Assembly (NCBI RefSeq): GCF_963921235.1
Contig: NC_086128.1
Span: 41,354,001 to 41,418,000, forward strand
Length of the DNA: 64,000 bases
Reading direction: 5' to 3'
Origin: Mobula hypostoma
Lineage: Eukaryota
Part shown: piece after piece, positions 385-48,000 of the stretch
How the letters are laid out: each line of letters starts with the position of its first letter
How positions within the stretch are numbered: the first letter of the stretch is position 1
Made by a program: the position numbers and the translations under genes
The notes under the pieces: model-generated
What the model saw: the letters and a program-made list of their open reading frames with translations, nothing else
Databases searched by the model: none
What the model was told of the DNA's origin: nothing

Positions 385-3078
385 TTCTTAATTTTCTCAG
401 ACATACCTAAATGTATTTTTGTAATTAAATCATAAACAATTGCTATTAAACTCTTCTGATAGGGGTTTAAACCTAAAATATTTTCTGTAATTTCAGTTTG
501 ATGTGATATCGAAAAAGTAGGTAAAATAACTTTCAAAAAGTTTCTAATCTGTAAATATCTGAAAAACTGTGATCTAGGCAAAATATATTTATTAGACAAC
601 TGTTCAAGGGACATGAGACAATTATCCATGAATAAATCACGAAAACATATTATTCCCTTCATTTTCCATAAAAGAAAAGCTTGATCAGTTCTAGATGGTT
701 GGAAGAAAAAATTGGATATAATAGGACTTGATAGGATAAATTTATTCAATCCAAAAAAATTGCAAAATTGAAACCATTTTCGTATTGTATGTTTAGTTAT
801 TGGATTAATCATTTGTTTATTCAGTTTAGTAAGTGCAAAGGGAAGCAAAGCCCCTAAAATAGAAGCCAATGAGAACCCCTGTACAGACTCACACTCGAGG
901 TTCACCCATCGTGGACATTGAATTTCATCCAAATCTTGTGTCCAGAACATTAGATATCTAATATTAATTGTCCAATAATAGAATCTAAAGTTCGGCAATG
1001 TCAAACCGCCATCCTTTTTAGATTTCTGTAAATATTTCTTACTTAATCTAGGATTTTTATTCTGCCATATATTTGAAGAAATTTTAGAATCAATAATATC
1101 AAAAAAGGATTTAGAGATGAAGATTGGTACCACCTGAAATAGATACAGAAATTTAGGTAAAATAATCATCTTAATAGCATTGATTTGACCAATCAATGAT
1201 AGGGACAATGGGGACCATTTAGTAAGCAGTTGTTTAACATGATCAATTAAGGGTAAAAAGTTAACTTTAAATAGATCCTCATGCTTCTTAGTAATTTTAA
1301 CACCCAAACAAGTAAAATCAAAGACACGACCCACCCAGCCAACACACTTTTCGTCCCTCTTCCCTCCGGGAGAAGGCTCAGGAGCTTGAAGACTCGTACG
1401 GCCAGATTTGGGAACAGCTTCCTTCCAACTGTGATAAGACTGCTGAACGGATCCTGACCTGGATCTAGGCCGTACCCTCCAAATATCTGGACCTGTCTCT
1501 TGGGTATATTTTTGCACTACCTTACTTTCCATTTTTCTATTTTCTATTTATGATTTATAATTTAAACTTTTAGTATTTACTATCGATTTGTAATCCAGGG
1601 AGCAGGAAGCGCAGAATCAAATATCACTGTGATGATTGTACGTTCTAGTATCAATTGTTTGGCGACAATAAAGTATAAAGTATAATCAGTAACCAGTCTA
1701 AATGGTGATTGTCTATAGATTGAGAACTTGCATATTTAATGGAAAAAGCTCACTCTTATTAAGATTCATTTTATAACCCGAAAAACTACTAAACTGAGCA
1801 AGTAGTAATATTAATGCAGGGATGGATTTCTCTGGATTAGAGATGTATAGTAACAGGTCATCTGCATATAATGATACCTTATGCGTCTCATTCCCACGAA
1901 TAATGCCAAATATATTGGGTGAATCACGAAGAGCGATTGCCAAGGGTTCCAAGGCAATATCAAATAGTGAAGGTCTTAAAGGACAGCCCTGTCCAGTACC
2001 TCGAAAAAAACGAAAAAAGGGGGATCTCTGATTATTAGTAAGTACAGAAGACAAAGGTATATGATATATCAATTTAATCCAAGATATGAATTTTGGGCTA
2101 AAATTAAATTTCTCAAGGATGTTAAATAAATATTCCCATTCAACTCTATCAAACACCTTCTCGGCGTCAAGCGAATAGCACATTCTGGAGTTTTAGATGA
2201 AGTATATACAATGTTTATCAACCTCCTAACATTAAAATTACGAATAATGATTTTTAACAAATCCTGTCTGGTCGTCCGAGACAATTTGTGGCAATACATT
2301 TTCCAATCTAATTGCTAATATTTTGGAAAAAAGTTTGGAGTCCACATTTAACAAGGATAAAGGTCTATATGATGCACATTCAGTGGGGTCTTTATCTTTT
2401 TTAGGAATTAAAGAAATAGATGCTTCATAAAAAGATTGTGGTAATTTACCTACAAATAAGGCATCCTTAAAAATTCTACATAACCAAGGAGAAAGTAGAC
2501 TTGAAAAAGATTTTTAAAATTATACTGTATACCCACCCAGGCCGGGTGCTTTACCAGAATTCATCGAGGAAATTGCTTTCTTTACTTATTCTTCCGTAAT
2601 GGGTGCATCTAATGTTAAACATTCATTAAGTGGTAATTTCAGAATATTCAATTTTCTTAAAAATTCATGCATTATGGTAGAATCATCAGGAAATTCTGAT
2701 TGGTATAAAGAGGTATAGAACTCTTGAAAAGATTTATTAATTTCGTTTGACCGTCAAAGTACCATCCCATTTACGAATTTTAATAGTCTGACATTTAGCT
2801 GAAGCAGCTTTCATTTGATTGGCCAGTAATTTACCCGATTTAACACCATGTATATAAAATTGACTCTTAGTTTTAAGTAATTGATTTTCAATTGGGGATG
2901 TTAATAACAAACTGTGTTGCATCTGAAGTTCAACTCTCATTTTGTAAAGCTCCAAATTAGAAGCAGCAGAATATTTTTAATCAATTTCTTTAATCTTATC
3001 AACCAATGTACATATTTCATTATTAATATATTTTTTCAATCCAGCAGAATATGAAATAATGTGCCCACGGATATATAC
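385..3078 (-). mobile_element. L1/Tx1-clade LINE ORF2 fragment (RT and C-terminal part), decayed, interrupted at ~1318-1685
   Basis: ORF 1713-2183 has SLDAEKVFDRVEW, RGTGQGCPL and SLYADDLLLY (L1-type RT motifs). ORF 2737-2955 resembles the L1 ORF2 linker (KSGKLLANQMK). Multiple frameshifts. Ends approximate. Confidence 0.88.
1318..1685 (+). mobile_element. Rex1/Babar-type LINE 3' end inserted in the L1
   Basis: Translates to the ORF C-terminus KDTTHPANTLFVPLPSGRRLRSLKTRTARFGNSFLPTVIRLLN, matching the Rex1-type ends at 29120 and 43255. Ends in aataaag(tataaag)n. L1 sequence resumes on both sides. Confidence 0.8.
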
Positions 3079-3304: not shown

Positions 3305-3585
3305 TCGGGGCAATTTACAATGCCAAGTAATTTCCCAACCCGCAAGCCTTTAGGATGTCGTAACAAACTGGAGCACCCAGAGAAAATCCACACAGTCACT
3401 AGGATAATGTGCAAAATCCACCCAGACTGAACCTAAGGTCACAACCGACTCTAACCCAGCTCCGGGTCTGTATTGATGACAGCTCCCTTCCTCCATCCAA
3501 TACCTCTGTCGAGTATTTATAAAACTAGGGTTAGGGTTATGTCACACTGCTCCTGGATCACTGGAACTGTGAGGCAGCAGCACTG
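3305..3585 (-). mobile_element. Old V-SINE/HE1-like SINE
   Basis: Reverse complement of the core seen at 41582 and 49903 (aaactggagcacccagagaaaatccacacagtcac), plus a degenerate tRNA-like head. Confidence 0.55.
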
Positions 3586-4542
3586 TCACCTAGATCTCAA
3601 TGCTGCCACTTGCCTTGACTTTTCTCATCTGTCTGGGTCTCAATACTGGACCCTCTTCCAGGATCACCACTGTCTTCTCAGGTATAGTGGAATTAGAATG
3701 GGCAAGGATTACAAGCTTGCATGGGGTTGGCTGGAGGTGCCACATGAGGCAGCATTGGAGAGGTGTGGTCGGTGATATATCAGGCAGCACTTTGGGCCTG
3801 AAGAAGGGTTAAATAACTTGAAAGGTATTAATTGAGCCGAGTTCTCCTTTAAATCATGAGGACCCAGGTCTTGTAGTGATCTCAGATTCTGTTGTGGAGC
3901 GATATTAACTTCACACATGCCTCACATACTTTAGTCAAGGCACTGAAAAATACTACAAGTGCTCTCTTTGCAAAATTCTCCAAGTTGACTGGAACAAAAT
4001 CCTAGAAGTGGCATTAAGACATGAGCAGTGTGTGCCATGCTATTCCACATGTGCATAGAGAATCCCAGAATAAAAAGTTCCCATCTCTCAATCCACACTG
4101 TTAAACTCTAATAATCTATTATGTTTGCGTTTCCTGAAATTGGTTTGTGCAGCACACAAAACATTGCACCATATAATCTCATTTCTAGGTCATTGTCTCA
4201 CCAGGTGAGATTCGTGAAATTCTAAAATGAAGCACTTCCAGCTTAATTCTCTGAATTAAACAGGGTGGCCACAAATAGGTTTTGTAAAATATATTTCCTC
4301 AGAAGTGCCAGCTGTTGCTGAAGCCCACAAATTCTGGGTGAAAATGTGATATGATCAGCGAGCCAAATCACTCTAACAAGAGGTCCTTAGCACACGTTCT
4401 TTCTCACTGCTTCTGTCATTTAGATAAGCTAATTGAAATAAACCTACACAACAGGAATTCTGCAGATGCTGGAAATTCAAGCAACATACATCAAAGTTGC
4501 TGGTGAACGCAGCAGGCCAAGCAGCATCTATAGGAAGAGGTA

Positions 4543-4580
4543 CAGTCGACGTTTCAGGCCGAGACCCTTCGTCAGGACTA
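4543..4580 (-). ncRNA. Minimal type I hammerhead ribozyme in the PLE 3' UTR
   Basis: RNA reads uaguc-CUGACGA-agg(gucucgg)ccu-GAAA-cg-UC-gacug: catalytic core, stem I aguc/gacu, stem II agg/ccu, palindromic ACGU in place of stem III. Matches the minimal HHRs known from PLEs. Confidence 0.85.
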
Positions 4581-4874
4581 ACTGAAGGAAGAGTGAGTAA
4601 GGGATTTGAAAGCTGGAGGGGGAGGGGGAGATGCAAAATGATAGGAGAAGACAGGAGGGGGAGGGATAGAGCCGAGAGCTGGACAGGTGATAGGCAAAAG
4701 GGGATACGAGAGGATCATGGGACAGGAGGCCTAGGGAGAAAGACGGGGAGGGGGGGTGACCCAGAGGATGGGCAAGTGGTATATTCAGACGGACAGAGGG
4801 AGAAAAAGGAGAGTGAGAGAAAGAATGTGTGCATAAAAAGGAGTAACAGCTGGGGTACGAGGGGGAGGTGGGGC

Positions 4875-7800
4875 CTAGCGGAAGTTAGAGAAGTCAATGT
4901 TCATGCCATCAGGTTGGAGGCTACCCAGACGGAATATAAGGTGTCGTTCCTCCAACCTGACTGTGGCTTCATCTTTACAGTAGAGGAGGCCGTGGATAGA
5001 CATGTCAGAATGGGAATGGGATGTGGAATTAAAATGTGTGGCCACTGGGAGATCCTGCTTTCTCTGGCGGACAGAGCGTAGATGTTCAGCAAAGCGGTCT
5101 CCCAGTCTGCGTCGGGTCTCACCAATATATAAAAGGCCACATCGGGAGCACCGGACGCAGTATATCACCCCAGTCGACTCACAGGTGAAGTGATGCCTCA
5201 CCTGGAAGGACTGTTTGGGGCCCTGAATGGTGGTAAGGGAGGAAGTGTAAGGGCATGTGTAGCACTTGTTCCGCTTACACGGATAAGTGCCAGGAGGGAG
5301 ATCAGTGGGGAGGGATGGGGGGGACGAATGGACAAGGGAGTTGTGTAGGGAGCGATCCCTGCGGAATGCAGAGAGAGGGGGGGAGGGAAAGATGTGCTTA
5401 GTGGTGGGATCCCGTTGGAGGTGGCGGAAGTTACGGAGAATAATATGTTGGACCCGGAGGCTGGTGGGGTGGTAGGTGAGGACCAGGGGAACCCTATTCC
5501 TAGTGGGGTGGTGGGAGGATGGAGTGAGAGCAGATGTACGTGAAATGGAGGAGATGCGTTTAAGAGCAGAGTTGATAGTGGAGGAAGGGAAGCCCCTTTC
5601 TTTAAAAAATGAAGACATCTCCCTCGTCCTAGAATGAAAAGCCTCATCCTGAGAGCAGATGCGGCGGAGACGGAGGAATTGCGAGAAGGGGATGGCGTTT
5701 TTGCAAGAGACAGGGTGAGAAGAGGAATAGTCCAGATAGCTGTGAGAGTCAGTAGGCTTATAGTAGATATCAGTGGATAAGCTGTCTCCAGAGACAGAGA
5801 CAGAAAGATCTAGAAAGGGGAGGGAGGTGTCGGAAATAGACCAGGTAAACTTGAGGGCAGGGTGAAAGTTGGAGGCAAAGTTAATAAAGTCAACGAGTTC
5901 TGCATGCGTGCAGGAAGCAGCGCCAATGCAGTCGTCGATATAGCGAAGGAAAAGTGGGGGACAGATACCAGAATAGGCACGGAACATAGATTGTTCCACA
6001 AACCCAACAAAAAGGCAGGCATAGCTAGGACCCATACGGGTGCCCATAGCTACACCTTTAGTTTGGAGGAAATGGGAGGAGCAAAAGGAGAAATTATTAA
6101 GAGTAAGGACTAATTCCGCTAGACGGAGCAGAGTGGTGGTAGAGGGGAACTGATTAGGTCTGGAATCCAAAAAGAAGCGTAGAGCTTTGAGACCTTCCTG
6201 ATGGGGGATGGAAGTATATAAGGACTGGACATCCATGGTGAAAATAAAGCGGTGGGGGCCAGGGAACTTAAAATCATCGAAAAGTTTAAGAGCGTGAGAA
6301 GTGTCACGAACATAGGTAGGAAGGGATTGAACAAGGGGTGATAAAACCGTGTCAAGGTATGCAGAAACGAGTTCGGTGGGGCAGGAGCAAGCTGAGAGAA
6401 TAGGTCTGCCAGGACAGGCAGGTTTGTGGATCTTGGGTAGGAGGTAGAAACGGGAAGTGCGGGGTGTGGGAACTATAAGGTTGGTAGCAGTGGATGGGAG
6501 ATCCCCTGAGCGGATAAAGTCGGTGATAGTGTGGGAGACAATGGCCTGGTGCTCCTTGGTGGGGTCACGAACGAGGGGTAAATAAGAGGAGGTATCCGCG
6601 AGTTGTCGCTGTGCCTCGGCAAGGTAGAGGTCAGTACGCCAGACTACAACAGCACCCCCCTTATCGGCGGGTTTAATAATAAGGTTAGGATTAGTGCGGA
6701 GGGAGTGGAGAGCAGAGCGTTCCGAAGGAGTGAGGTTAGAATGGGGACAAGGTGCGGTGAAGTCGAGACGGTTGATGTCCCGTCGGCAGTTGGCAATAAA
6801 GAGATCCAGAGCAGGCAGAAGACCAGAGCGGGGTGTCCATGAAGAAGAGGAGGGTTGAAGACGGGAGAAGGGGTCATCGGTGGGGGTGGAAGAGTCCTTG
6901 CCGAAGAAGTAGGCTCGGAGACGGAGACGGCGGAAGAAAAGTTCCGCATCATGGCGAACACGGAACTCGCTGAGGTGTGGGCGAAGGGGGACAAACGTGA
7001 GGCCCTTACTGAGAACAGAGCGTTCTGCCTCCGACAGTTGAAGGTCGGAGGGGATGGTAAAGACCCGGCACGGATGAGAGCTGGGATCAGAAGGGGGAGG
7101 GGGAGGCTGGGGGTGTCAGTGGAGAGGGGAGGGTTGGGGTGAGAGGAAGATGGAGCCTCTGAGGGCCCAGGAGCTGACGGTGGGATCTGAGGGAGACGGG
7201 ATTGCAGAGTATTGGTGGGGGAAGGGGAGACGGGAGTCACAACAGCAGCACATAAAGACCCAGCCTGGAGTTCAAGGCCGGAGTCGCAGTTGGTGGTTGC
7301 GTAATCACTGTGAAGGTGTCCATGGTCGTGGCTGGAGTCCGGGTTTTGAATATGCCCTGAGGTGTTGGAGCCGCCGAGATCAATGGCAGGCGCCGCAATT
7401 GAAAGTTCATGCCTGCTAGCGTCGGGGCCGGCAGGCTCTGGGGTCCGTAGATGTAAGATCTTGCGATCTTTGCCTAACATGACAAAGTCAAAAAAACGGC
7501 GATTGCAGGCGTGGATCCGACGGAGGATGAAATAGCGGGTAGGACCATTACAGACGGCGAAGAAAGTGTCCCGAAGGTGTGGAAGGGTCTGGGATAGGGA
7601 CACCAAGTACCTCCTCATGGCGGAGAGCGTCGCCTTCAGAGCTTGACGGGAGAAGCGGCGAGAGGCAGAGTCAATAAAATGTGAGTACCTGGGATCCTCA
7701 GAAGGTCCAAATTGAGAGGCTTGGAAACGAATCCTAAAGCCAACTAGAGTAAGTTGGCGACGGAGGCACGTTCCAAGAAAGGATACATGGCAGTGATAGC

Positions 7801-7924
7801 GAGTCTGAGTCAAAATGTGGTCGAAAAGTTGAAGAGCCGAAGAAATCACAGATGGGGAGCAGTGAGAGATGGTTTCACTGAACTCCCGTCGAAGAGAGGA
7901 TCTAAACTTCTTCGGTGTAGGCAT
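4875..7924 (-). CDS. PLE polyprotein (N-terminal domain, Pro/Ser-rich linker, RT, Cys-rich linker, GIY-YIG endonuclease), ~1016 aa if one C is restored at ~7100
   Basis: ATG at 7924 (MPTPKKFR). Adding 1 C in a homopolymer at ~7100 (5 C here, 6 in the other arm) joins it to the frame with KPADKG, LPKIHK, GRPI, DVQSLYTSIP, QTKGVAMG, RYIDD, CKRNKCYTC and GVIYCVRCSRCGLLYIGETRRRLGDRFAEH. Stop at 4875. Confidence 0.9.
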
Positions 7925-10268
7925 CACCAATACTCTGCAATCCCGTCTCCCTCAGATCCCACCGTCAGCTCCTGGGCCCTCAGAGGCTCCATCTTCCTCT
8001 CACCCCAACCCTCCCCCCTCCACTGACACCCCCAGCCTCCCCCCTCCCCCCCGATATCAGCTCTCGTCCATGCCGGGTCTTCACCATCCCCTCCGACCTT
8101 CCACTCTCTGAGGCAGAGCGCTCTGTCCTCAGTAAGGGCCTCACGTTTGTCCCCCTTCGCCCACACCTCAGCGAGTTCCGTGTTCGCCATGATGCGGAAC
8201 TTTTCTTCCGCCGTCTCCGTCTCCGAGCCTACTTCTTCGGCAAGGACTCTTCCACCCCCACCGATGACCCCTTCTCCCGTCTTCAACCCTCCTCTTCTTC
8301 ATGGACACCCCGCTCTGGTCTTCTGCCTGCTCTGGATCTCTTTATTGCCAACTGCCGACGGGACATCAACCGTCTCGACTTCACCGCACCTTGTCCCCAT
8401 TCCAACCTCACTCCTTCCGAACGCTCTGCTCTCCACTCCCTCCGCACTAATCCTAACCTTACTATTAAACCCGCTGATAAGGGGGGTGCTGTTGTAGTCT
8501 GGCGCACTGACCTCTACCTTGCCGAGGCACAGCGACAACTCGCGGATACCTCCTCTTATTTACCCCTCGATCGTGACCCCACTAAGGAGCACCAGGCTAT
8601 TGTCTCCCACACTATCAACGACTTTATCCGCTCAGGGGATCTCCCATCCACTGCTACCAACCTTATAGTTCCCACACCCCGCACTTCCCGTTTCTACCTC
8701 CTACCCAAGATCCACAAACCTGCCTGTCCTGGCCGACCTATTGTCTCAGCTTACTCCTGCCCCACCGAACTCGTTTCTGCATACCTTGACACGGTTTTAT
8801 CACCCCTTGTTCAATCCCTTCCTACCTATGTTCGTGACACTTCTCACGCTCTTAAACTTTTCGATGATTTTAAGTTCCCTGGCCCCCACCGCTTTATTTT
8901 CACCATGGATGTCCAGTCCTTATATACTTCCATCCCCCATCAGGAAGGTCTCAAAGCTCTACGCTTCTTTTTGGATTCCAGACCTAATCAGTTCCCCTCT
9001 ACCACCACTCTGCTCCGTCTAGCGGAATTAGTCCTTACTCTTAATAATTTCTCCTTTTGCTCCTCCCATTTCCTCCAAACTAAAGGTGTAGCTATGGGCA
9101 CCCGTATGGGTCCTAGCTATGCCTGCCTTTTTGTTGGGTTTGTGGAACAATCTATGTTCCGTGCCTATTCTGGTATCTGTCCCCCACTTTTCCTTCGCTA
9201 TATCGACGACTGCATTGGCGCTGCTTCCTGCACGCATGCAGAACTCGTTGACTTTATTAACTTTGCCTCCAACTTTCACCCTGCCCTCAAGTTTACCTGG
9301 TCTATTTCCGACACCTCCCTCCCCTTTCTAGATCTTTCTGTCTCTGTCTCTGGAGACAGCTTATCCACTGATATCTACTATAAGCCTACTGACTCTCACA
9401 GCTATCTGGACTATTCCTCTTCTCACCCTGTCTCTTGCAAAAACGCCATCCCCTTCTCGCAATTCCTCCGTCTCCGCCGCATCTGCTCTCAGGATGAGGC
9501 TTTTCATTCTAGGACGAGGGAGATGTCTTCATTTTTTAAAGAAAGGGGCTTCCCTTCCTCCACTATCAACTCTGCTCTTAAACGCATCTCCTCCATTTCA
9601 CGTACATCTGCTCTCACTCCATCCTCCCCCCACCACCCCACTAGGAATAGGGTTCCCCTGGTCCTCACCTACCACCCCACCAGCCTCCGGGTCCAACATA
9701 TTATTCTCCGTAACTTCCGCCACCTCCAACGGGATCCCACCACTAAGCACATCTTTCCCTCCCCCCTCTCTCTGCATTCCGCAGGGATCGCTCCCTACAC
9801 AACTCCCTTGTCCATTCGTCCCCCCCATCCCTCCCCACTGATCTCCCTCCTGGCACTTATCCGTGTAAGCGGAACAAGCGCTACACATGCCCTTACACTT
9901 CCTCCCTTACCACCATTCAGGGCCCCAAACAGTCCTTCCAGGTGAGGCATCACTTCACCTGTGAGTCGACTGGGGTGATATACTGCGTCCGGTGCTCCCG
10001 ATGTGGCCTTTTATATATTGGTGAGACCCGACGCAGACTGGGAGACCGCTTTGCTGAACATCTACGCTCTGTCCGCCAGAGAAAGCAGGATCTCCCAGTG
10101 GCCACACATTTTAATTCCACATCCCATTCCCATTCTGACATGTCTATCCACGGCCTCCTCTACTGTAAAGATGAAGCCACAGTCAGGTTGGAGGAACAAC
10201 ACCTTATATTCCGTCTGGGTAGCCTCCAACCTGATGGCATGAACATTGACTTCTCTAACTTCCGCTAG
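7925..10268 (+). pseudogene. 5'-truncated inverted copy of the PLE ORF (RT + GIY-YIG) with frameshifts at ~8050 and ~9760
   Basis: ORFs 8905-9945 and 9942-10268 match the minus-arm protein. The arm begins inside the Pro/Ser linker. Both indels lie in C runs. Confidence 0.9.
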
Positions 10269-10562
10269 GCCCCACCTCCCCCTCGTACCCCAGCTGTTAC
10301 TCCTTTTTATGCACACATTCTTTCTCTCACTCTCCTTTTTCTCCCTCTGTCCCTCTGAATATACCTCTTGCCCATCCTCTGGGTCACCCCCCCTCCCCGT
10401 CTTTCTCCCTAGGCCTCCTGTCCCATGATCCTCTCGTATCCCCTTTTGCCTATCACCTGTCCAGCTCTCGGCTCTATCCCTCCCCCTCCTGTCTTCTCCT
10501 ATCATTTTGCATCTCCCCCTCCCCCTCCAGCTTTCAAATCCCTTACTCACTCTTCCTTCAGT

Positions 10563-10600
10563 TAGTCCTGACGAAGGGTCTCGGCCTGAAACGTCGACTG
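10563..10600 (+). ncRNA. Minimal type I hammerhead ribozyme in the inverted PLE arm
   Basis: tagtc CTGACGA agggtctcggcct GAAA cgTC gactg; predicted cleavage after C10595. Confidence 0.85.
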
Positions 10601-11129
10601 CGCCTCTTCCTATAGATGCTGCTTGGCCTGCTGCGTTCACCAGCAACTTTGATGTATGTTGAAATAAACCTACCAGTGGTTCATGTATCCTCCCACTCAC
10701 AAAGAAAAACGGCCTCAGAGGCCTCGCTGTGTTCCATAAACAATTTCTGTTGCACAATCCATGATCCATCAAAATGTGTAAATTAATGATATTTCTTTTT
10801 CCAGCATGGACTGACTTTGTGAGAATAAGTTATTTTATGTTAGCTATTTACTCTTTTAAAATGTAAAATAAGTGAATTCTTACTTGGGCATTCAGCAGGT
10901 TCCTGGCCCACTCTTCTCCACCAATGTGACAAGATGCCAGATCATTTTTCTCCACCTGCTACTCATATTCCTTGTAACTTGCAAAATAATCCTATTAGGT
11001 TAAGGCAAGGTTAATAACTGGTTCACAAAACTGAAGCTTTATTAAAATAGTCAAGAAATGGTAGTTTGTGATACTAACTTTACACGGATCTTATTGTCAA
11101 GGTACTTAAAAAGACTACCAATGCTGTCT

Positions 11130-11620
11130 CCACAAAACTCGACAAGTTGACCAGAACAAAAATGAATACATATTAGTGTTATTTTCCAGGCCACTACTGA
11201 GGCCCTGGGCTAGACTTAGTCAGCTGTGCTGTGCAGGCCTGGCTGTTCTTATGACCGACACCAGACTCCCAAAGCAGACATACTATTCTCAGCTTTGTCA
11301 TGACATTAGCAGGTGAAAAGAAGAAAAGAATCATGAATGTGCTCAAAGCTTACTTGAAGAAGGAAAACATCTCCACTCACTCCTCTGAACCTCTAGCCCA
11401 TGATCATTCAAAGAGGAATGGGATCATTTGGGACTGAATTGAGTTCATGTACAAAGAGAGCATCGTAGCAAAAGGAGTGCAATTCATTACAAACTATACA
11501 CTACCTGCACAAACTGCAGAAGAGCCTGCAGCTTTCATATTGACCTAATTACACCCCTCAGAACCCACAAAAGCAGAGTGGAAGCAAGTTACCCTGGATC
11601 CCGAGGGACGGCTCTGAAGA
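11130..11620 (+). mobile_element. Old RTE (BovB-like) LINE 3' fragment
   Basis: Degenerate KR...VLKAYLKK..ISTHSSEPLAHD resembles the RTE ORF C-terminus. Boundaries approximate. Confidence 0.5.
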
Positions 11621-11807
11621 TACAATGGAAGAAAAGTTGGTAGAGTATCTAGCCCTACAAAATTCATCCAAATGTATGGAAAGTTGGCCACCCATCTCTT
11701 GGCTCGTGTTGTGCTTGCAGGTCTAAAGAGACTTCCACATCATTTATCCATCAAGATATATCAGTCTCCATGCAAATCTCTTTTTGGAGGTTTGTTTAGT
11801 AAACTGG

Positions 11808-13890
11808 ACCATAAAACCACAAGACATAGGAGCAGAATTAGGCCATTCAGCCCATCAAGTCTGCTCTGCCATTCCATCATTGTTGATCCTGGATCCCACT
11901 CAACCCCATATACCTGCCTTCTTGCCATATCCTTTGATGCCCTGACTGACTAGGAAACGATCAACTTCCACCTTAAATATATGCACAGACTTGGCTTCCA
12001 CCGCAGTCAGTGGCAGAACATTCCATAGATTTGCTACTCTCTGGCTAAAAAAATTCTTCCTTGCCTCTGTTCTAAAGGGTCGCCCCTCAAATTTGAGGCT
12101 CTCCCCTCTAGTTCTGGATACCCCCGCCAAAGGAAACATTTGCTACACATTCATGCTATCTAGTCCTTTCAACATTCAGTAGGTTTCAATGAGCCCTCCC
12201 CCACATTCTCCTAAATTCCAGTGAGTACAGTCCCAATGCAGCCAAACGCTCCTCATATGTTATCCCCTTCATTCCCAGAATTATCCTTGTGAACCTCCTC
12301 TGGATTCTCTCTAATGACAACACATCCTTTTTGAGATATGGGGCCCAAAATTGTTGACAATACTCCAAGTGCTATCTGACTGGTGTCTTATAAAGGCTCA
12401 GCATTATCTCCTTGCTTTTATATTTTATTCCCCTTAAAATGAATGCCAACATTGCATTTGCCTTCTTTACCACAGACTCAACCTGTAAATTAACCTTCTG
12501 GGAGTCTTGCACGAGGACTACTGAGTCCCTCTGCAGCTCTGATATTTGAACCTTCTCTCCATTTAGATAATAGTTTTCACTGTCTTCTCCTATCATTTTG
12601 CATCTCCCCCTCCCCCTCCCCCTCCAGCTTTCAAATCCCTTACTCACTCTTCCTTCAGTTAGTCCTGACGAAGGGTCTCGGCCTGAAACGTCGACTGTAC
12701 CTCTTCCTATAGATGCTGCCTGGCCTGCTGCGTTCACCAGCAACTTTGATGTATGTTGCTTGAATTTCCAGCATCTGCAGAATTCCTGTTGTTTTCACTA
12801 TTGTTCCTTTTACCAAAATGCATTAACATACATTTCCCAACACTGTATTCCATCTGCCACTTTTTTGCCCATTCTTCCAATTTGTCTAAGTCTTACAGCA
12901 ATCACATTGCTTCCTCAGCACTACCTACCCCTTCACCTATCTTCGTATCATCCGCAAACTTTGCCACAAAGCCGTCAGTTCCATTATCTAAGTCATTGAC
13001 AAACAATGTGAAAAGCAGTGGTCACCGGCAGCCAACCAGAAAAGGTCACTTTTATTCCTACTAGCTGCCTCCTGCCTGTCAGCCATTCCTCTATCCATGC
13101 CAGTATCTTTCCTGTAACGCTATAAAATTTTATCTTGTTAAGCAGTCGCATGTGTGGCACCTTATCAAACGCCTTCTGAAAATCTAAGTAAATGACATCC
13201 ACTGCCTCTTCTTTGTCCACCCTGCTTGTTAATTCCTCGAAGAACTCTAACAGATTTGTCAGGCAAGATTTCCCTTCACTGAAACCATGCTGACTTTGAC
13301 ATATTTTATCATTAGTTTCCAAGTACCTCGGCATCTCATCCTTAATAATAGACTCCAACACTTTCCCAACTAATGGGGGTAGGCTAACTGGCCTATAATT
13401 TCCTATCTTTTGCCTTCCTCCCTTCTTAAAGAGTGGAGTGACATTTACAATCTTCCAGTCCTCCAGGACCATGCCAGAATCAAGTGATTCTTGGAAGATC
13501 ATGACTAATGCATCCATTATCTCTTCAGCAACCTCTCTCAAAACTCTGGGATGTCGTCCATCTGGTCCAGGTGACTTATCCACCTTAAGACCTTTGTGTT
13601 TGCCTAGCACTTTTTCCTTTGTAATAGCAATGGCACTCACTCCTGCTCCCTGACACTCACGGACCACTGGCACACTGCTAGTGTCTTCCACAGTGAAGGT
13701 AGATGCAAAGTACCCATTAAGTTCATCTTCCATTTCCTTGTCCCCCATTACCACCTCACCAGCATCATTTTCCAGTGGTCCGATATAAACTCTCACCTCC
13801 CTTTTACTCTTCATATAACTGAAACAACGTTTGGTATCCTGCTTTATATTATTGGCGAGTCTGCCCTCATAATTCATATTTTCCTTTTTG
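11808..13890 (-). mobile_element. CR1 (HER1-like) LINE, 5'-truncated, with internal deletion near 13020 and a PLE insertion at 12582-12790
   Basis: ORF 12993-13877 (KSPGPDG, NYRPVSL, YLDFQKAFDKVPH) and ORFs 11900-12139 and 12186-12368. Close relative of the 43743-46530 copy. Confidence 0.92.
12582..12790 (+). mobile_element. 209-bp 5'-truncated PLE 3' end with intact HHR (12660-12697) and 9-bp TSD
   Basis: Nearly identical to the PLE 3' UTR at 4448-4655. gttttcact at 12573-12581 and 12791-12799. Confidence 0.92.
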
Positions 13891-16150: not shown

Positions 16151-18124
16151 TAACTTGGAAAAGGACTGTTCATATCCCTCCATATTTGTGGCTGAGGTTA
16201 TCAAGTGTCTTTGTGTGGTTTCACCAGATTTCAAGCATCTACAGTCTCTTGTGTCAGCTTTATATTAAGTTTTGTTTATAACATCCTGAATTTTAATAAC
16301 ATAAAGAAAGTAAAACAGCTACTATGTATACAGCATATCGTAAGTGTCAGCATTTCACGATATGTTTTACCTCAAGTGGTACTTATGAATGGAATAACTA
16401 TTGAAGGAAATGTGGCAGTCTATATGCCCACGCAAGCAGGAATAACTAGATAATAAGTTTCAAAATATAAGTTGTGAAGAAATATTGAATGGGACATTGT
16501 TCATATTTGTTTTTAAAGTATTGCCATTAAATTCTCCCAAGGGGGATGTACTGTAGGCTCACAGTTAAGAGCCTCATATGAAGCCAGGCACCTCTGACTA
16601 GCTCTTCTTGCAGCACTGTAAACCTAATGGCTGTTCAGGATGGAAAATTGCTAACATCCATAGATTTCTAGTGATGATTTGTAAGTTTGTACAGGTAAGG
16701 TCAAAGGTTTTGCGAATCTATTTGCATGACCCTTTCATGTTAAACCACCTGTTAAAAATTCAGGAACACCTTTATATTAAACAAATGCCACACATTTGCC
16801 TTGAACTGGATTGTATCATTTTAGTGCACTAAAACATGACTGCATTAATCACCACTGCCAAATCAGGTTCCCACAAAAAATCATGATATGATATTTATTG
16901 TCAAAAATCATTTCTTTAACTAGCATTAGGAAGGTTACATCTAGAATCAAAGGGGCATCAAATCATTGTTTTATATTTTCTAACCTGTTGTGGCACAGCC
17001 TTCGGAAGATGACATCTCTTAAAGGTACATTTCTCCTAACAACACAGGCAGAGGCTGCTGGGCCGAAGGAGGCAACTCCCACAATCACTCAAAGGGGCTC
17101 TGGTCAATTAGAAACATGCCAGAGAAGGACCTTGTGCATTGGACGGTGACGACACTTGTAAAAAGAAAAGATTGGCAGAAGTGATGGCCACCCTCTCCTG
17201 AATGGGCAATCCCCACACAGTGGAGCATTACTGAAAGGAATTTCATAATCTCATAAGGTATATCAAGGTTATCAGCCTCTTGTTGAGTGGAAACCCTCAC
17301 AAATAAACACCTTTATGTGAAGATCTGAATTCTTTATTGAGGTGTAATTGATCAGGAAATACAGATGTTGTTGCAAGTCACTTAAGTAAATGGTGCAAGC
17401 GTTTATTTATTCATTCATTCATTTGTTACAGTCAGTGTAAGTGGACCTGCAGAGTTGGATTTGAGAAGATTTTATGTTCCATTTGGGCCCTGCTTGATAT
17501 TCATTTACTAGATTTCTGTTAAAGATTCGTCGCTTCAGAAACATTGGGAAATTTTTATTTCCAGGTTCCTTGTGAAAATGCTCTTTATTTCTGCAGCAAA
17601 ATCCCAATTTATGGGAGATGAGGCTGTAGAATTTGAGAGTAAAATCCCCCTAGAAGCTGCCTTCTGCCTCCTTATCATTTTGCCCTGCTACTTTTCAGAC
17701 CCTGGGTCTACATACTACTCTTCCTCCAGCATCAGAGTCTGGCTTGTGTTTGCCAAGTATGTGCAGTATGTGGCCTTCAGTTACAATGTCTTTGCACTTG
17801 CCAGGCATGTACTGCAGGGTGCCCCAGACCGATTTCATCTTGAGGAGACCAATGAAATGTTTTATTCCAGAACTGATATTTGCATGGCTCTTCTATCTAG
17901 GATGAGGTAATATGGTTGAAATGTACATGGTGTGAGGAACAGAAGAAATCGGAAATAGCTTTTGCCCTAAGCATTCTTTCCTTCAGAAGTGCACCCTTGC
18001 TCACTCAGGATGAAAGAGTCATTTGTGCCTCATCACTAATGGACATTTTGCTGCCTTCAGCCTGTGTCTCAGTCGATGTCAAAACACGCAGAAATGGGTG
18101 CAAAAAATGGATTGGTACTTGGAG

Positions 18125-18250
18125 ACACAAGAGACTACAGATGCTGGAATCTGGAGCAAGACACAAAAAGCTGGGGGAACTCAATGGATCAGGCAGCATG
18201 AAGAGAGGAAAATGGACAGTCAAGGTTATGGATCAAGATCCTTCATCTGG
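18125..18250 (-). mobile_element. Older PLE 3'-end fragment ending at a degenerate HHR
   Basis: cagatgctggaatctggagcaa..ggaactca..ggcagcat..cttcatctggact. acttggag is repeated at 18117-18124 and 18251-18258 (possible TSD). Confidence 0.7.
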
Positions 18251-27673: not shown

Positions 27674-27804
27674 TCCTGCTGAGGGGTTTCAGCCCAAAAT
27701 GTCGACAATACTCTTTTCCATAGATGCTGCCTGGCCTGCTGAGTTCCTCCAGCATTTTGTGTGTGTTGCTTGGATTTCCAGCATCTGCAGATTTTCTGTT
27801 GTTT
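27674..27804 (+). mobile_element. PLE 3'-end fragment starting at a decayed HHR
   Basis: tcctgctgaggggtttcagcccaaaatgtcgac..tagatgctgcctggcctgctgagttcctccagca..cagcatctgcag. Confidence 0.8.
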
Positions 27805-43742: not shown

Positions 43743-46530
43743 TGAGACCTGGCTAAAGGATGCATGTCTCTGGGAGCTGAATGTCCAAGGATACACGGTG
43801 TATCGGAAGGATAGGAAGGTAGGCAGAGGGGGAGGCATGGCTTAATTGGTAAGAAATGATATTAAATCATTAGAAAGAGGTGATATAGGATCGGAAGGTG
43901 CAGAATCTTTATGGGTTGAGCTAAGAAATAGCAGGGGTAAAAGGACCCTGATGGCAGTTATTTATAGGCCTCCAAATAGCTGCAGGGATGTGGACTACAA
44001 ATTACAGCTGGAAATAGAAAAGGCTTGTCAGAAGGGCAGTGTTATGATAATTGTGGGGGATTTTAACATGCGAGTAGATTGGGAAAATCAGGACGGCACT
44101 GGATCTCAAGAGAGAGAATTTGTAGAATGTCTGCGAGGTGTTTTTTTAGAACAGCTTGTTGTTGAGCCCACTAGGGGATCGGCTGTACTGGATTGGGTAT
44201 TGTGTAATGAACCGGAGGTGATTAGAGAGATTGAGGTGAAGGAACCCTTAGGAGGCAGTGATCATAACATGATTGAGTTCACTGTGAAATTAGAAAAGGA
44301 GAAGCTGAAATCTGATGTGTCGGTATTTCAGTGGAGTAGAAGAAATTACAGTGGCATGAGAGAGGAACTGGCCAAAGTTGACTGGAAAGGGACACTGGCG
44401 GGAAAGACGGCAGAGCAGCAGTGGCTGGAGTTTATGCAAGAAATGAGGAATGTGCAAGACAGGTATATTCCAAAAAAGAAGAAATTTTCGAGTGGAAAAA
44501 GGATGCAACCATGGTTGACAAGAGAAGTCAAAGCCAAAGTTAAAGCAGAGGGCATACAAGGAAGCAAAAATTAGTGGGAAGACAGAGGATTGGGAAGTTT
44601 TTAAAACCTTACAAAAGGAAACCAAGAAGGTCATTAAGAGAGAAAAGATTAACTATGAAAGGAAGCTAGCAAATAATATCAAAGAGGATACTGAAAGCTT
44701 TTTCAAGTATATAAAGAGTAAAAGACAGGTGAGAGTAGATATAGGACCGATAGAAAATGATGCTGGAGAAATTGTAATGGGAGATAAGGAGATGGCAGAG
44801 GAACTGAATGAGTATTTTGCATCAGTCTTCACTGAGGAAGACATCAGCAGTACACCGGACACTCAAAGGTGGCAGGGAAGAGAAGTGTGCGCAGTCACAA
44901 TTACGACAGAGAAAGTACTCAGGAAGCTGAATAGTCTAAAGGTAGATAAATCTCCTGGACCAGATGGAATGCACCCTTGTGTTCTGAAGGAAGTAGCTGT
45001 GGAGATTGCAGAGGCATTAGCAATGATCTTTCAAAAGTCGATAGATTCTGGCATGGTTCTGGAAGACTGGAAGATTGCAAATGTCACTCCGCTATTTAAG
45101 AAGGGGGCAAGGAAGCAAAAAGGAAATTATAGACCTGTTAGCTTGACATCGGTGGCTGGGAAGTTGTTGGAGTCGATTGTCAAGGATGAGGTTACAGAGT
45201 ACCTGGAGGCAATTGACAAGATAGGCAGAACTCAGCATGGATTCCTTAAAGGAAAATCCTGCCTGACAAACCTATTACAGTTTTTTGAGGAAATTACCAG
45301 TAGGTTAGACAAGGGAGATGCAGTGGATGTTGTATATTTGGATTTTCAGAAGGCCTTTGACAAGGTGCCACACATGAGGCTGCTTAACAAGATAAGAGAG
45401 CATGGAATTACAGGAAAGTTACATACGTGGATAGAGCGTTGGCTGATCGGCAGGAAACAGAGAGTGGGAATAAAGGGATCCTATTCTGGTTGGCTGCCGG
45501 TTACCAGTGGTGTTCCACAGGGATCAGTGTTGGGGCCGCTTCTTTTTACATTGTACATCAACGATTTGGATTATGGAATAGATGGCTTTGTGGCTAAGTT
45601 TGCTGACGATACGAAGATAGGTGGAGGGGCCGGTAGTGCTGAGGAAACGGAGAGTCTGCAGAGAGACTTGGATAGATTGGAAGAATGGGCAGAGAAGTGG
45701 CAAATGAAGTACAATGTTGGAAAGTGTATGGTTATGCACTTTGGCAGAAAAAATAAACGGGCAGACTATTATTTAAATGGGGAAAGAATTCAAAGTTCTG
45801 AGATGCAACGGGACTTGGGAGTCCTTGTACAGGATACCCTTAAAATTACCCTCCAGGTTGAGTCAGTAGTGAAGAAGGCGAATGCAATGTTGGCATTCAT
45901 TTCTAGAGGAATAGAGTATAGGAGTAGGGATGTGATGTTGAGGCTCTATAAGGCGCTGGTGAGACCTCACTTGGAGTACTGTGGGCAGTTTTGGTCTCCT
46001 TATTTAAGAAAGGATGTGCTGACGTTGGAGAGGGTACAGAGAAGATTCACTAGAATGATTCCGGGAATGAGAGGGTTAACATATGAGGAACGTTTGTCTG
46101 TTTTTGGACTGTATTTCTTGGAGTTTAGAAGAATGAGGGGAGACCTCATAGAAACATTTCGAATGTTGAAAGGCACGGACAGAGTGGATGTGGCAAAGTT
46201 GTTTCCTATGATGGGGGAGTCTAGTACGAGAGGGCATGACTTAAGGATTGAAGGGCGCCCATTCAGAACAGAAATGCGAAGAAATTCTTTTAGTCAGAGG
46301 GTGGTGGATCTATGGAATTTGTTGCCACGGGCAGCAGTGGAGGCCAAGTCATTGGGTGTATTTAAGGCAGAGATTGATAGGTATCTGAGTAGCCAGGGCA
46401 TCAAAGGTTATGGTGAGAAGGCGGGGCAGTGGGACTAAATAGGAGAATGGATCAGCTCGTGATAAAATGGCAGAGCAGACTCGATGGGCTGAATGGCCTA
46501 CTTCTTCTCCTTTGTCTTATGGTCTTATGG
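43743..46530 (+). mobile_element. Young CR1 (HER1-like) LINE, 5'-truncated within the endonuclease domain, 7-bp TSD
   Basis: tctaatc at 43736-43742 and 46531-46537; (tcttatgg)2 tail. APE motifs ETWL, YRPP, GDFN, SDH. RT ORF 44729-46438. Stop at ~43833 and frameshift at ~44550. Confidence 0.95.
44729..46438 (+). CDS. CR1 ORF2 reverse transcriptase portion (569 aa open)
   Basis: KSPGPDG, NYRPVSLTS, DFQKAFDKVPH, GVPQGSVLGP, KFADDTK. Confidence 0.9.
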   Translation: MRVDIGPIENDAGEIVMGDKEMAEELNEYFASVFTEEDISSTPDTQRWQGREVCAVTITTEKVLRKLNSLKVDKSPGPDGMHPCVLKEVAVEIAEALAMIFQKSIDSGMVLEDWKIANVTPLFKKGARKQKGNYRPVSLTSVAGKLLESIVKDEVTEYLEAIDKIGRTQHGFLKGKSCLTNLLQFFEEITSRLDKGDAVDVVYLDFQKAFDKVPHMRLLNKIREHGITGKLHTWIERWLIGRKQRVGIKGSYSGWLPVTSGVPQGSVLGPLLFTLYINDLDYGIDGFVAKFADDTKIGGGAGSAEETESLQRDLDRLEEWAEKWQMKYNVGKCMVMHFGRKNKRADYYLNGERIQSSEMQRDLGVLVQDTLKITLQVESVVKKANAMLAFISRGIEYRSRDVMLRLYKALVRPHLEYCGQFWSPYLRKDVLTLERVQRRFTRMIPGMRGLTYEERLSVFGLYFLEFRRMRGDLIETFRMLKGTDRVDVAKLFPMMGESSTRGHDLRIEGRPFRTEMRRNSFSQRVVDLWNLLPRAAVEAKSLGVFKAEIDRYLSSQGIKGYGEKAGQWD

Positions 46531-48000
46531 TCTAATCCTCTGATGAGGACCTGGCTCCTGGACTCCCGGTTCCCTCCTCCTGAAGTCAATAATCAGCTGC
46601 TTGGTCTAGCTGACATTGAGGGAGAGTTTGCTGTTGTGGCACCACTCAGACAGATTTTCAATCTCCTTTCTATGTGCTGATTTGTCACCACCTTTGATTT
46701 GGCCAACAACGTTGGTGTCATCAGCAAACTTAAATATGGCATTGGAGTGAGTAGTGCTTAGCCACACAGTCGATAGTGTAAAATGAGTAGAGCAGGGGGC
46801 TAAGCACACAGCCTTGTGGTGTACCTGTGCTGATGGAGATTGTGGAGGAGATATTGTTGCCAATCTGAACTGACTGGAGCCTGCAAGTGAAACCCAGATC
46901 CCATTGCACAAGGAGGTACTGAGCCAAGGTCTTAAAACTTATTGATTATTTTTGAGGGGATGATGGTATTGAATGTCCAGCTGTAGTCGATAAAGAGCCA
47001 ATGAGATGGCATCTGGTCTGTGGATTTGTTGTGCTGGGTAGGCAAATTGGCATGGATCCAAGTCACATCTCAGGAGGAGTTGATACGTTTCATTACCAAC
47101 CTCTCAAAACACTTCATCACTGTGGATATAAGTACTACTGGATGATAGTCATTGAGGCAAGTCACCATGTTCTTCTTAGGCCAAGGGTGTAATTGAAGCT
47201 GCTTGAAGCAGGTGGGTACCTCAGACTGGGGAAGGGAGAGTTTCAAGATATCAGTGAACACTCCAGCTAGTTGATGAGCACAGGTCTTTAATACTTGGCT
47301 AGGTACCGCATCTGGGCTGGATGCTTTCTGTGGATTCACCCTCATGTAGGATGCTCTTATGTCAGCCTCAGAGATTGAAATCACACGGTCACTGGGGGCT
47401 GTGGAAGTTTGTGAAGGTACCTCCATGTTTTGATGGTCAAAGTGAGCATAAAAGGCATTGAGCTCATCTGGGAGAGAAACCTTGTTGTCACCTAAGTTGC
47501 CTGGTTTCACTTTGTAAGAGGTAATAACATTCAAGCCCTTCCACAGCTGTTGAACATCCTTCAGTGATTCAAGTTTGGTCTCAAGAGACGCCTTTCCAGA
47601 GGTTGTTCTTGGACTTCTTGTATCTTGGTCACCAGACCTGAATGCGCTCAGCAGATTGTGGATCTCATGGCTCATCCAGGGCTTCTGGTGGGGGAAGATG
47701 CTGAATGATTTTGAGGGGACACACTCATCTACAACTATTTTTGTAAAGTCCGTGACAACCGTGGCATATTCATTCAAGTCCTCTGATGAGTCCTTGCACA
47801 CTGCTCAGTCCACCGACTCAAGGCAATCCCACAGCCACTCTTCTGCCTCCTGCAACCATCTTTCTGTTGTCCTTATCTCTGGAGCCTTGCTCTTTTGCCT
47901 CTGCCTGGATACAGGTAGAAGGACAAAACCAAGCTGACAGCATCATACAAAGCTGATGCGTGATATTGGAGTAAGTGTGGGGACTGAAAGGCCTTTGTCT

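What the first reader, a model, noticed from the sequence alone, without database searches (positions are those of the whole stretch)
4433..10673. 6.2-kb palindromic Penelope-like insertion made in one event (two inverted ~2.7-kb arms inside one TSD)
Seen: a near-full-length PLE on the minus strand (7924 to 4448) is fused at 7924/7925 to a 5'-truncated plus-strand copy (7925-10661). The arms 4482-7217 and 7925-10661 surround a ~707-bp unpaired centre, and ttgaaataaacctac flanks both ends. Known: PLEs often form inverted or tandem pseudo-LTR structures, usually with a short inverted part. Inference: both nicked target strands primed reverse transcription from a PLE 3' end and the cDNAs were joined head-to-head. 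An inverted arm spanning the whole RT-EN region is unusually long.
Basis: partly seen in the sequence, partly recalled or inferred. Interest (0 to 1): 0.85.

Follow-up and report, generated by a model that had tools for sequence, protein, structure and literature searches.

The report
Head-to-head Penelope retrotransposon insertion
A 6.2-kb insertion in a ray genome consists of two copies of a Penelope-like retrotransposon joined head to head inside one target-site duplication; this layout is already a known signature of these elements, but the two arms differ in a pattern that suggests they were copied from two different RNA templates.

Summary
A complete Penelope-like element (PLE) unit lies on the minus strand (7924 to 4448). 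It abuts a 5'-truncated plus-strand copy (7925-10661). The whole is flanked by an exact 15-nt direct repeat.

The architecture is a published PLE hallmark: an inverted 5'-truncated copy, one target-site duplication (TSD) around the composite, and a 30-40-nt "tail" at only one end. Here the 34 nt at 4448-4481 are that tail. In vitro work on an Anolis PLE showed nicking and extension of both target strands, and two reverse-transcription start sites one tail apart. So a single event primed from both strands is the best reading.

The "unusually long arm" claim is weak:
- The literature describes large inverted repeats of variable size.
- Seven related loci I sampled had inverted arms from 0.15 kb to at least 1.8 kb.

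New here:
- 24 of the 30 arm mismatches lie in the centre-proximal 830 bp.
- Those mismatches are mostly synonymous (pN/pS 0.23).
- The distal 1.9 kb differs by 0.3%, with no synonymous change.

The arms were therefore probably not identical at birth. That argues against one arm being copied from the other and for two different RNA templates. This is a clean new member of a known kind, of modest interest.

The parts
4433..4447 (.). Left copy of the target-site duplication (TTGAAATAAACCTAC)
   Evidence: Exact 15-nt direct repeat. It has only two occurrences in the window, both at the element boundaries.
4448..4481 (-). 34-nt 'tail': a 3' extension present on the minus-strand copy only
   Evidence: The left arm runs 34 nt beyond the point where the right arm ends. 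An independent copy at 12580-12792 ends at the same terminus...CCTGTTGT. This matches the published 30-40-bp PLE tail (PMC8557442, PMC2377424, PMC11167929).
4448..7924 (-). Complete PLE unit (3477 nt), from the ORF start codon to the tail end. It has no 5' UTR and no direct pseudo-LTR.
   Evidence: Residue 1 (MPT...) aligns to residue 1 of the 904-aa homologue P0004. The RT-EN reading frame is open from 7115 to 4878 (746 aa).
7100..7924 (-). Coding region for the N-terminal helical domain plus a proline-rich linker. Bases 7218-7924 are the unpaired centre of the palindrome.
   Evidence: Homology to the N-termini of PLE ORFs runs over about 160 aa.
4875..7115 (-). RT plus GIY-YIG endonuclease frame. 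Motifs: ADKGG 6668-6654, YIDD 5942-5931, Cys/His motif 5279-5181, GIY...YIG 5168-5115, stop TAG 4877-4875. It is out of frame with the N-terminal part because of a 1-nt change in a C-run near 7112-7085.
   Evidence: Homologues reach E=1e-285, and the best partial matches (92-94% identity) are in Mobula hypostoma.
4543..4581 (-). Minimal hammerhead-ribozyme motif in the 3' module, left arm
   Evidence: Read from the sequence: helix I, CUGACGA, one extra A, helix II, GAAA, palindromic ACGU, GUC cleavage triplet. It fits the min-HHR descriptor of PMC4209133. The Rfam models do not detect it.
4482..7217 (-). Left arm of the inverted repeat
7924..7925 (.). Head-to-head junction. The 5' end of the full unit (its ATG) abuts the 5'-truncation point of the plus copy (unit position 708). 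There is no filler and no microhomology.
7925..10661 (+). 5'-truncated PLE copy (right arm). It ends at the inner 3' terminus without a tail. It carries a frameshift in a C-run at about 9760 and one extra C in the run at 8030-8058.
10562..10600 (+). Minimal hammerhead-ribozyme motif, right arm (identical to the left-arm copy)
10659..10673 (.). Right copy of the target-site duplication. The first 3 nt (TTG) could belong to the element instead.
6388..7217 (.). Centre-proximal 830 bp of the left arm (pairs with 7925-8753). It holds 24 of the 30 arm mismatches, and these are mostly synonymous.

Best explanation
This is one insertion of an endonuclease-bearing Penelope-like retrotransposon in a ray genome, made by target-primed reverse transcription from both strands of one staggered break. 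The top strand was nicked after ...AAACCTAC (4447). Its 3'-OH primed a cDNA that started at the outer RT start site (the tail end) and ran the full 3477-nt unit to the base complementary to the ATG (4448 to 7924). The bottom strand was nicked 12-15 bp away. Its 3'-OH primed a second cDNA at the inner start site, 34 nt further in, and this cDNA reached unit position 708 (10661 to 7925). The two cDNA 3' ends were then joined without homology, most simply by each cDNA end jumping onto the other and copying it as second strand. Fill-in of the stagger gave the single TSD. What is shown: the anatomy, the termini, the TSD and the PLE identity. What is inferred: the order of events and the end-to-end jump. 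A sub-claim, held at about 0.5: the two cDNAs were copied from RNAs that were not identical in the 5' third of the shared region, either two source elements or one chimeric template.
For: (1) One exact 15-nt direct repeat flanks the composite, and neither arm has its own TSD. (2) Both outer ends are PLE 3' ends. One carries a 34-nt tail and the other lacks it. The tail terminus recurs in an independent copy with its own TSD at 12580-12792. (3) In vitro, the Anolis PLE protein cleaves and extends both strands. It initiates at two adjacent internal sites whose spacing equals the tail (PMC11167929). (4) The same architecture occurs in a distant relative, L003: a 10-bp TSD GGTAAGCATG around an inverted arm of about 1.3 kb plus a full copy, with the tail only on the inverted end. 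(5) The full copy starts exactly at the ORF's first codon, immediately after where a tail would end in a tandem array. This suggests a defined RNA 5' end. (6) For the sub-claim: 24 of 30 mismatches lie in the proximal 830 bp (binomial P=3e-8). There pS=0.076 against 0 in the distal coding part (Fisher P=1.6e-7), and pN/pS=0.23 (P=4e-4; simulated neutral P=0.0002-0.002). Only 3 of the 14 synonymous differences are CpG transitions. States from both arms are found in other species' elements: H14/Q26 in Hemitrygon P0122, and P26 in Chiloscyllium P0121.
Against: No reads, no empty allele and no orthologous site could be examined, so single-event origin rests on anatomy alone. There is only one locus. 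The inner 3' terminus of this family is seen only once in the window. The 5' patch of divergence could also come from later ectopic gene conversion from another family member. No near-identical copy of either arm type was found in the protein databases, so the two source lineages are not directly demonstrated. DNA of the closest genomes could not be fetched.
Confidence: 0.75

Rival explanations
1. The same single both-strand event occurred, but both cDNAs came from identical RNA. The 0.8-kb divergent patch arose later, by ectopic gene conversion of one arm from another genomic copy of the family.
For: The family has other copies nearby (12580-12792), so donors exist. A conversion tract from a selected lineage would also look synonymous-rich.
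Against: It needs an extra event in an insertion whose remaining 1.9 kb differs by only 0.3%. The tract would have to start at or beyond the inner edge of the arm.
Confidence: 0.2
2. One arm was copied from the other. Either the first cDNA snapped back and self-primed, or a fold-back replication error later duplicated part of a single insertion in inverted orientation.
For: Self-priming was proposed for PLE inverted repeats that have palindromic junctions (PMC3846280). Locus L005 shows a perfect palindrome of at least 1833 nt with a 17-nt spacer.
Against: There is no complementarity between the cDNA 3' end (...GGCAT, 7920-7924) and the bases next to 7217 that would let it prime. The copied arm would have to stop exactly 34 nt short of the other end, at a known alternative PLE terminus, and directly against the TSD. 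Arms copied from one another would be identical at birth, which does not fit the synonymous-rich 2.9% mismatch divergence of the proximal 830 bp.
Confidence: 0.06
3. Two separate insertions occurred. One copy inserted first with the 15-bp TSD. A second copy later landed exactly between one TSD copy and the 5' end of the first, without making its own TSD.
For: PLE endonucleases can target PLE sequence (PMC11167929). The arms are not identical.
Against: It requires base-exact placement at an arbitrary 5'-truncation point and no second TSD. The reported self-targeting is at the tail/pLTR region, not at 5' junctions. The distal 1.9 kb of the arms differs by only 0.3%, so the two insertions would also have to be nearly simultaneous.
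Confidence: 0.06
4. The palindrome is an assembly artefact, such as a fold-back chimeric read or a collapsed repeat.
For: Palindromic PLE structures are known to trouble assemblies (PMC8557442). L005's perfect palindrome sits at a contig end.
Against: The structure here is internal, with unique flanks on both sides. It is asymmetric (707-nt centre). Its arms differ by 30 substitutions and 4 indel events. Each arm ends at a biologically meaningful terminus next to a TSD.
Confidence: 0.03

Closest known systems
Drosophila virilis Penelope copies with inverted terminal repeats (PMC2377424 Fig. 1C; PMC3681739)
   Same: RT plus GIY-YIG element. It has a 34-37-bp terminal repeat ('34-bp repeat', the tail), and large inverted repeats of variable size flank the unit.
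   Different: The common D. virilis form has a partial direct tandem (pseudo-LTR) between the inverted copy and the full ORF. Here the inverted copy abuts the ATG directly, there is no direct pLTR, and the arm covers nearly the whole RT-EN region (2.7 kb).
PAc, the Poseidon-type PLE of Anolis carolinensis, reconstituted in vitro (PMC11167929)
   Same: It nicks and extends both target strands, starts reverse transcription at two internal sites one tail-length apart, prefers AT-rich targets, and has an N-terminal helical domain, RT and EN. This is the experimental counterpart of the mechanism inferred here.
   Different: In PAc the RT start sites lie 111-118 nt inside the ORF and the hammerhead overlaps the ORF start. 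Here the tail ends immediately before the ATG. The in vitro work did not show completed inverted insertions.
Canonical PLE insertion architecture (Craig et al. 2021, PMC8557442 Fig. 2; Adineta vaga Pen2a, PMC3846280)
   Same: A 5'-truncated inverted copy lies next to the 5' end, one TSD flanks the entire unit, and a 30-40-bp tail sits at one end only. My locus L003 shows the same layout.
   Different: The examples drawn there have short inverted pLTRs (about 0.2 kb). Here the arm is 2.7 kb and the arms are measurably heterogeneous.
L1 'twin priming' 5' inversions (Ostertag and Kazazian 2001; cited from my own knowledge, not checked here)
   Same: The second nicked target strand also primes reverse transcription in the same event, and the two cDNAs are joined.
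   Different: In twin priming the second primer anneals internally on the same RNA, so the two segments do not overlap and no palindrome results. Here both cDNAs start at the 3' end and overlap over 2.7 kb.

Membership tests
Endonuclease-bearing Penelope-like element (canonical, C-terminal EN) | PLE-type reverse transcriptase with the DKG motif and a YxDD catalytic motif | tested here: met
   ADKGG at 6668-6654 and YIDD at 5942-5931. Pfam RVT_1 scores only 19-24 bits, below its 29.6-bit cut-off. However, 1686 homologues have E<=1e-10, and the listed ones carry RVT_1/DUF8422/HTH_animal.
Endonuclease-bearing Penelope-like element (canonical, C-terminal EN) | C-terminal GIY-YIG endonuclease preceded by a Cys/His motif | tested here: met
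   Pfam GIY-YIG scores 24.4 bits (cut-off 22.6) on the right-arm piece, but 19.5-20.6 bits (below cut-off) on the left copy. VIY...YIG and CX4CX2C...HH were read at 5279-5115.
Endonuclease-bearing Penelope-like element (canonical, C-terminal EN) | N-terminal helical domain shared by Penelope/Poseidon-type ORFs | tested here: met
   BLASTP against three full-length homologues gives E=1e-15 to 9e-9 over about 160 aa, starting at or near residue 1 of the query.
Endonuclease-bearing Penelope-like element (canonical, C-terminal EN) | 5' truncation on insertion and TSDs of variable length | tested here: met
   The right arm is truncated at unit position 708. The copy at 12580-12792 keeps only 213 nt. 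TSDs are 12-15 bp and 7-8 bp.
Endonuclease-bearing Penelope-like element (canonical, C-terminal EN) | [quoted passage not shown] | tested here: met
   The 34 nt at 4448-4481 are present on the left end and absent on the right end.
Endonuclease-bearing Penelope-like element (canonical, C-terminal EN) | Hammerhead ribozyme motif in the terminal repeat region | tested here: inconclusive
   A motif fitting the published min-HHR descriptor was read at 10562-10600 and 4581-4543. It is conserved in older fragments and in L003. No Rfam hammerhead model matches, even at E<=10. Cleavage was not testable.
Endonuclease-bearing Penelope-like element (canonical, C-terminal EN) | Direct pseudo-LTR (partial tandem copy upstream of the full copy) | tested here: not met
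   No direct repeat of element sequence was found at this locus. This is not obligatory for single copies: Penelope copies without terminal repeats but with a TSD are described in PMC2377424.
Endonuclease-bearing Penelope-like element (canonical, C-terminal EN) | Placement in a named PLE clade (Penelope/Poseidon, Neptune or Nematis) by RT phylogeny | not tested
   No tree with reference clade members was built.
PLE head-to-head inverted composite insertion | An inverted 5'-truncated copy abuts the 5' side, and one TSD encloses the whole composite | tested here: met
.

The most novel reading that the evidence does not exclude
The two arms were reverse-transcribed in one insertion event from two non-identical RNA molecules held by one, presumably dimeric, PLE ribonucleoprotein. 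Alternatively, one cDNA switched between two RNAs part-way. Either way, this locus would be a natural record that PLE integration is a symmetric, two-template reaction, and that inverted repeats do not arise by snap-back copying.
Probability: 0.45. Interest if true: 0.5.

Novelty: new member of a known kind. Interest (0 to 1): 0.3.

Why it matters
How PLEs build their tandem and inverted structures is still described as undefined (PMC8557442). The only biochemical data are in vitro and stop at first-strand extension (PMC11167929). This young locus preserves every junction of a completed both-strand event: the tail on one end, no tail on the other, a homology-free head-to-head joint, and a full unit starting at the ATG. 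Its arm-to-arm divergence pattern discriminates between 'two independent cDNAs' and 'one arm copied from the other'. A genome-wide census of such insertions in long-read ray or shark assemblies could therefore test the symmetric-TPRT model directly. In practical terms, a 2.7-kb-arm palindrome is a potential source of hairpin dsRNA and of genome instability, and it can trap assemblers and repeat annotators.

Tried and rejected
1. Rfam scans found no hammerhead or any other credible RNA family, either at gathering thresholds over the whole window or at E<=10 over 4300-10800. The hammerhead motif had to be read by eye.

2. I tried to fetch DNA around the closest homologues (Mobula hypostoma P0013 and P0024) to obtain more copies of the family. 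The sample files were too large and no DNA was returned.

3. I looked for a paralogous empty site for the main insertion within the window and found none.

4. I tested whether a retained intron explains the frame change between the N-terminal part and the RT. This is rejected. The Hemitrygon homologue P0122 reads straight through the linker into the RT, so each arm simply has a different 1-nt change in a C-run.

5. ADAR-type hyperediting or RT error as the source of the proximal differences is rejected. Nine of the 24 differences are transversions, the transitions show no one-directional bias, and there is a synonymous excess.

6. CpG decay as the cause of the synonymous excess is rejected. 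Only 3 of the 14 synonymous differences are CpG transitions.

7. A second protein search, meant to find near-identical members of each arm's lineage, found nothing closer than 90% identity.

8. A PDB sequence search gave no hit.

9. An RNA fold of the 3' module is not more stable than shuffled sequence (z=-0.8).
Full report
**1. Observation**

The inverted-repeat search over 3500-11700 returns four collinear blocks, 98-99% complementary. Together they form arms 4482-7217 and 7925-10661 around 707 unpaired bases. A global alignment of the minus-strand copy against the plus-strand copy gives 30 mismatches and 4 indel events over about 2736 bp, or 98.65% identity by BLAST.

The 15-mer TTGAAATAAACCTAC occurs only at 4433-4447 and 10659-10673 in the whole 64-kb window, even with two mismatches allowed. 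GC skew switches sign at about 7900-8000. The joint is exactly 7924/7925.

**2. What the element is**

- *Reading frames.* On the minus strand, a 746-codon frame is open from 7115 to 4878.
- *Motifs.* The frame contains the PLE-diagnostic ADKGG motif, YIDD, a Cys/His motif and a GIY...YIG endonuclease.
- *Pfam support.* It is weak. RVT_1 scores 19-24 bits, below its cut-off. GIY-YIG scores 24.4 bits, above its cut-off, on the right-arm piece only, and 19.5-20.6 bits (below the cut-off) on the left copy.
- *Homologues.* A database search finds 1686 homologues at E<=1e-10 with the RVT_1/DUF8422/HTH_animal domain set. The best are 92-94% identical partial proteins of Mobula hypostoma, 78-81% in Hypanus sabinus and about 72% in sharks. 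The window is therefore from a ray, probably a myliobatiform.
- *ORF start.* The 5' 825 nt (7924 to 7100) encode an N-terminal helical domain. Its first residue aligns with residue 1 of a 904-aa homologue, MPT... against MPT.... So the ATG at 7922-7924 is the true ORF start, and the minus-strand copy is an exact unit of 3477 nt running from the ATG to the 3' terminus.
- *Frameshifts.* The N-terminal part and the RT are out of frame in both arms. The Hemitrygon akajei homologue P0122 reads straight through this linker. Each arm therefore carries a different single-base change in a C-run. All four indel differences between the arms lie in C homopolymers. They could be real mutations or homopolymer sequencing errors.

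**3. The ends**

The right arm ends at ...GATGTATG(TTG), directly against the TSD. The left arm continues for 34 more nucleotides (4448-4481; in the sense orientation CTTGAATTTCC...CCTGTTGT) before its TSD copy.

A third, independent copy at 12580-12792 keeps 213 nt at 96.7% identity. It lies inside a LINE whose paralogue at 44642-46532 lacks it. It ends at the same ...CCTGTTGT terminus and has its own 7-8-bp TSD, TTTCACT.

This 34-nt piece is the PLE 'tail'. It is described as a 30-40-bp extension often present at only one end of an insertion (PMC8557442). It is reported as 31 bp in Adineta vaga (PMC3846280) and 34-37 bp in D. virilis (PMC2377424).

The 3' module also carries a motif that fits the minimal, dimer-type hammerhead ribozyme described for PLEs (PMC4209133). 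Its parts are helix I, CUGACGA, one extra A, a 4-bp helix II, GAAA, a palindromic ACGU and a GUC cleavage triplet. It sits at 10562-10600 and 4581-4543. Rfam models do not detect it, so this is a reading of the sequence, not a test.

**4. Comparison with known PLE architecture**

The literature describes the same layout. [quoted passage not shown] Transgenic lines contain 'long inverted repeats' (PMC3681739).

I fetched seven loci of related PLEs, at roughly 50-55% protein identity to the query, and looked for an inverted arm at the 5' side:

| Locus | Inverted 5' arm |
|---|---|
| L001 | 149 nt |
| L002 | none |
| L003 | about 1.3 kb |
| L004 | 190 nt |
| L005 | perfect palindrome of at least 1833 nt, cut by the contig end; may be an artefact |
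| L006 | none clear |
| L007 | tandem triplet of copies |

L003 reproduces the finding in detail. A 10-bp TSD (GGTAAGCATG) encloses an inverted truncated copy plus a full copy. The tail is only on the inverted end. It carries the same hammerhead motif. A 2.7-kb arm is therefore at the long end of a broad, known distribution. It is not a new kind of structure.

**5. Mechanism**

Purified Anolis PLE protein (PAc) cleaves and extends both target strands. It starts reverse transcription at two adjacent internal sites whose spacing corresponds to the tail. It is predicted to be a dimer and prefers AT-rich targets (PMC11167929). The locus maps onto this directly:

- The top-strand 3'-OH at 4447 primed a cDNA from the outer site through the whole unit.
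- The bottom-strand 3'-OH, 12-15 bp away, primed a cDNA from the inner site that reached unit position 708.
- The TTG shared between the element and the TSD allows up to 3 nt of primer-template pairing at the inner site.
- The two cDNA 3' ends meet at 7924/7925 with no filler and no microhomology. This fits an end-to-end template jump in which each cDNA is completed by copying the other. That last step is my inference.
- The full copy begins at the base that would follow a tail in a tandem array. This suggests the template RNA had a defined 5' end at that boundary. This too is inference.

**6. A new observation: the arms differ unevenly**

- *Clustering.* Twenty-four of the 30 mismatches lie in the 830 bp nearest the centre (7217-6388), a density of 2.9%. 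Then 872 bp have no difference at all. The distal 1.9 kb as a whole differs by 0.31% (binomial P=3e-8).
- *Synonymous excess.* In RT codons 9-243, 14 of 23 differences are synonymous. Random placement gives 6-7 on average (P=0.0002-0.002). By site counts, pS=0.076 and pN=0.017, a ratio of 0.23 (P=4e-4).
- *Contrast with the distal part.* The distal 503 codons have no synonymous difference and two non-synonymous ones, both at CpG sites (Fisher P=1.6e-7).
- *Not a CpG effect.* Only 3 of the 14 synonymous differences are CpG transitions.
- *Outgroups.* Derived states occur on both arms. The left arm's H14/Q26 are shared with the Hemitrygon element, and the right arm's P26 with a shark element.

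Differences filtered by selection must have arisen in active lineages, before this insertion. So the arms were probably not identical at birth in their 5' third. This argues against any model in which one arm is copied from the other (snap-back self-priming or fold-back duplication). It favours two cDNAs made on non-identical RNAs, or a template switch between RNAs. Later ectopic gene conversion of one arm remains a real alternative that I cannot exclude from a single locus.

The 0.3% distal divergence indicates a young insertion.

**7. Rivals**

- *Two sequential insertions.* This would need base-exact placement at an arbitrary truncation point and no second TSD.
- *Snap-back.* This lacks any priming complementarity. 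It would not explain termination exactly at the alternative PLE terminus.
- *Assembly artefact.* This is unlikely. The structure is internal and asymmetric, its arms differ by 34 events, and each arm ends at a meaningful terminus.

**8. Verdict**

The one-event, both-strand priming interpretation is supported and agrees with published biochemistry. The novelty claim about arm length is overstated.

The locus is a clean new example, in a ray, of a known PLE insertion architecture. Its added value is the arm-divergence pattern, which bears on an unresolved step of PLE integration and can be tested by a genome-wide census.

Noticed in passing
window 12580-12792 (+), inside 11807-13883: A third copy of the same PLE family, cut down to its last 213 nt (96.7% identical). 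It has the tail and its own 7-8-bp TSD (TTTCACT). It is inserted into a minus-strand LINE whose paralogue at 44642-46532 lacks it, which gives an internal 'empty site' control for the element's 3' boundary.
   Followed up: yes
window 27674-27802 (+), 28594-28468 (-), 56328-56445 (+), 61615-61713 (+), 18119-18241 (-): Older fragments (74-82% identical to the PLE; 18119-18241 is linked only via its 78% match to the 56328 fragment) match only the last ~130 nt of the PLE: the hammerhead motif, the GATGCTGCCTGGCCTGCTGAGTTCC... block and the tail. They may be extreme 5' truncations of other PLE families, or short non-autonomous elements that borrow the PLE 3' end. The core GAAA is mutated in some of them.
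   Followed up: partly
window 7112-7085 and 8030-8058; also 5524-5508/9618-9636 and 5392-5376/9752-9768: Every indel between the two arms lies in a C homopolymer. Each arm has a different 1-nt change that puts the N-terminal domain and the RT out of frame. The right arm has a further frameshift before the endonuclease. These could be real decay, RT slippage or homopolymer sequencing error, so the left copy might in fact be intact.
   Followed up: partly
window 43846-46438 (+), 12993-13877 (-), 1713-2183 (-): LINE-type retrotransposon remains with an AP-endonuclease and RVT_1 (E=6e-33, 2e-15 and 8e-22). The window is repeat-rich and I saw no obvious host exon.
   Followed up: partly
window 55424-55604: Two tandem copies of an 89-bp unit (83% matches).
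   Followed up: no
L005:1-3683 (ENA ERZ25878362 contig start): A related PLE forms a 100% perfect head-to-head palindrome of at least 1833 nt with a 17-nt spacer, cut off by the contig end. It is either a genuine symmetric PLE palindrome or a fold-back assembly artefact.
   Followed up: no
L007:8001-16411: Three tandem PLE ORFs (682, 919 and 919 aa) in a related element, an example of the tandem arrays that PLE transcripts are thought to come from.
   Followed up: no
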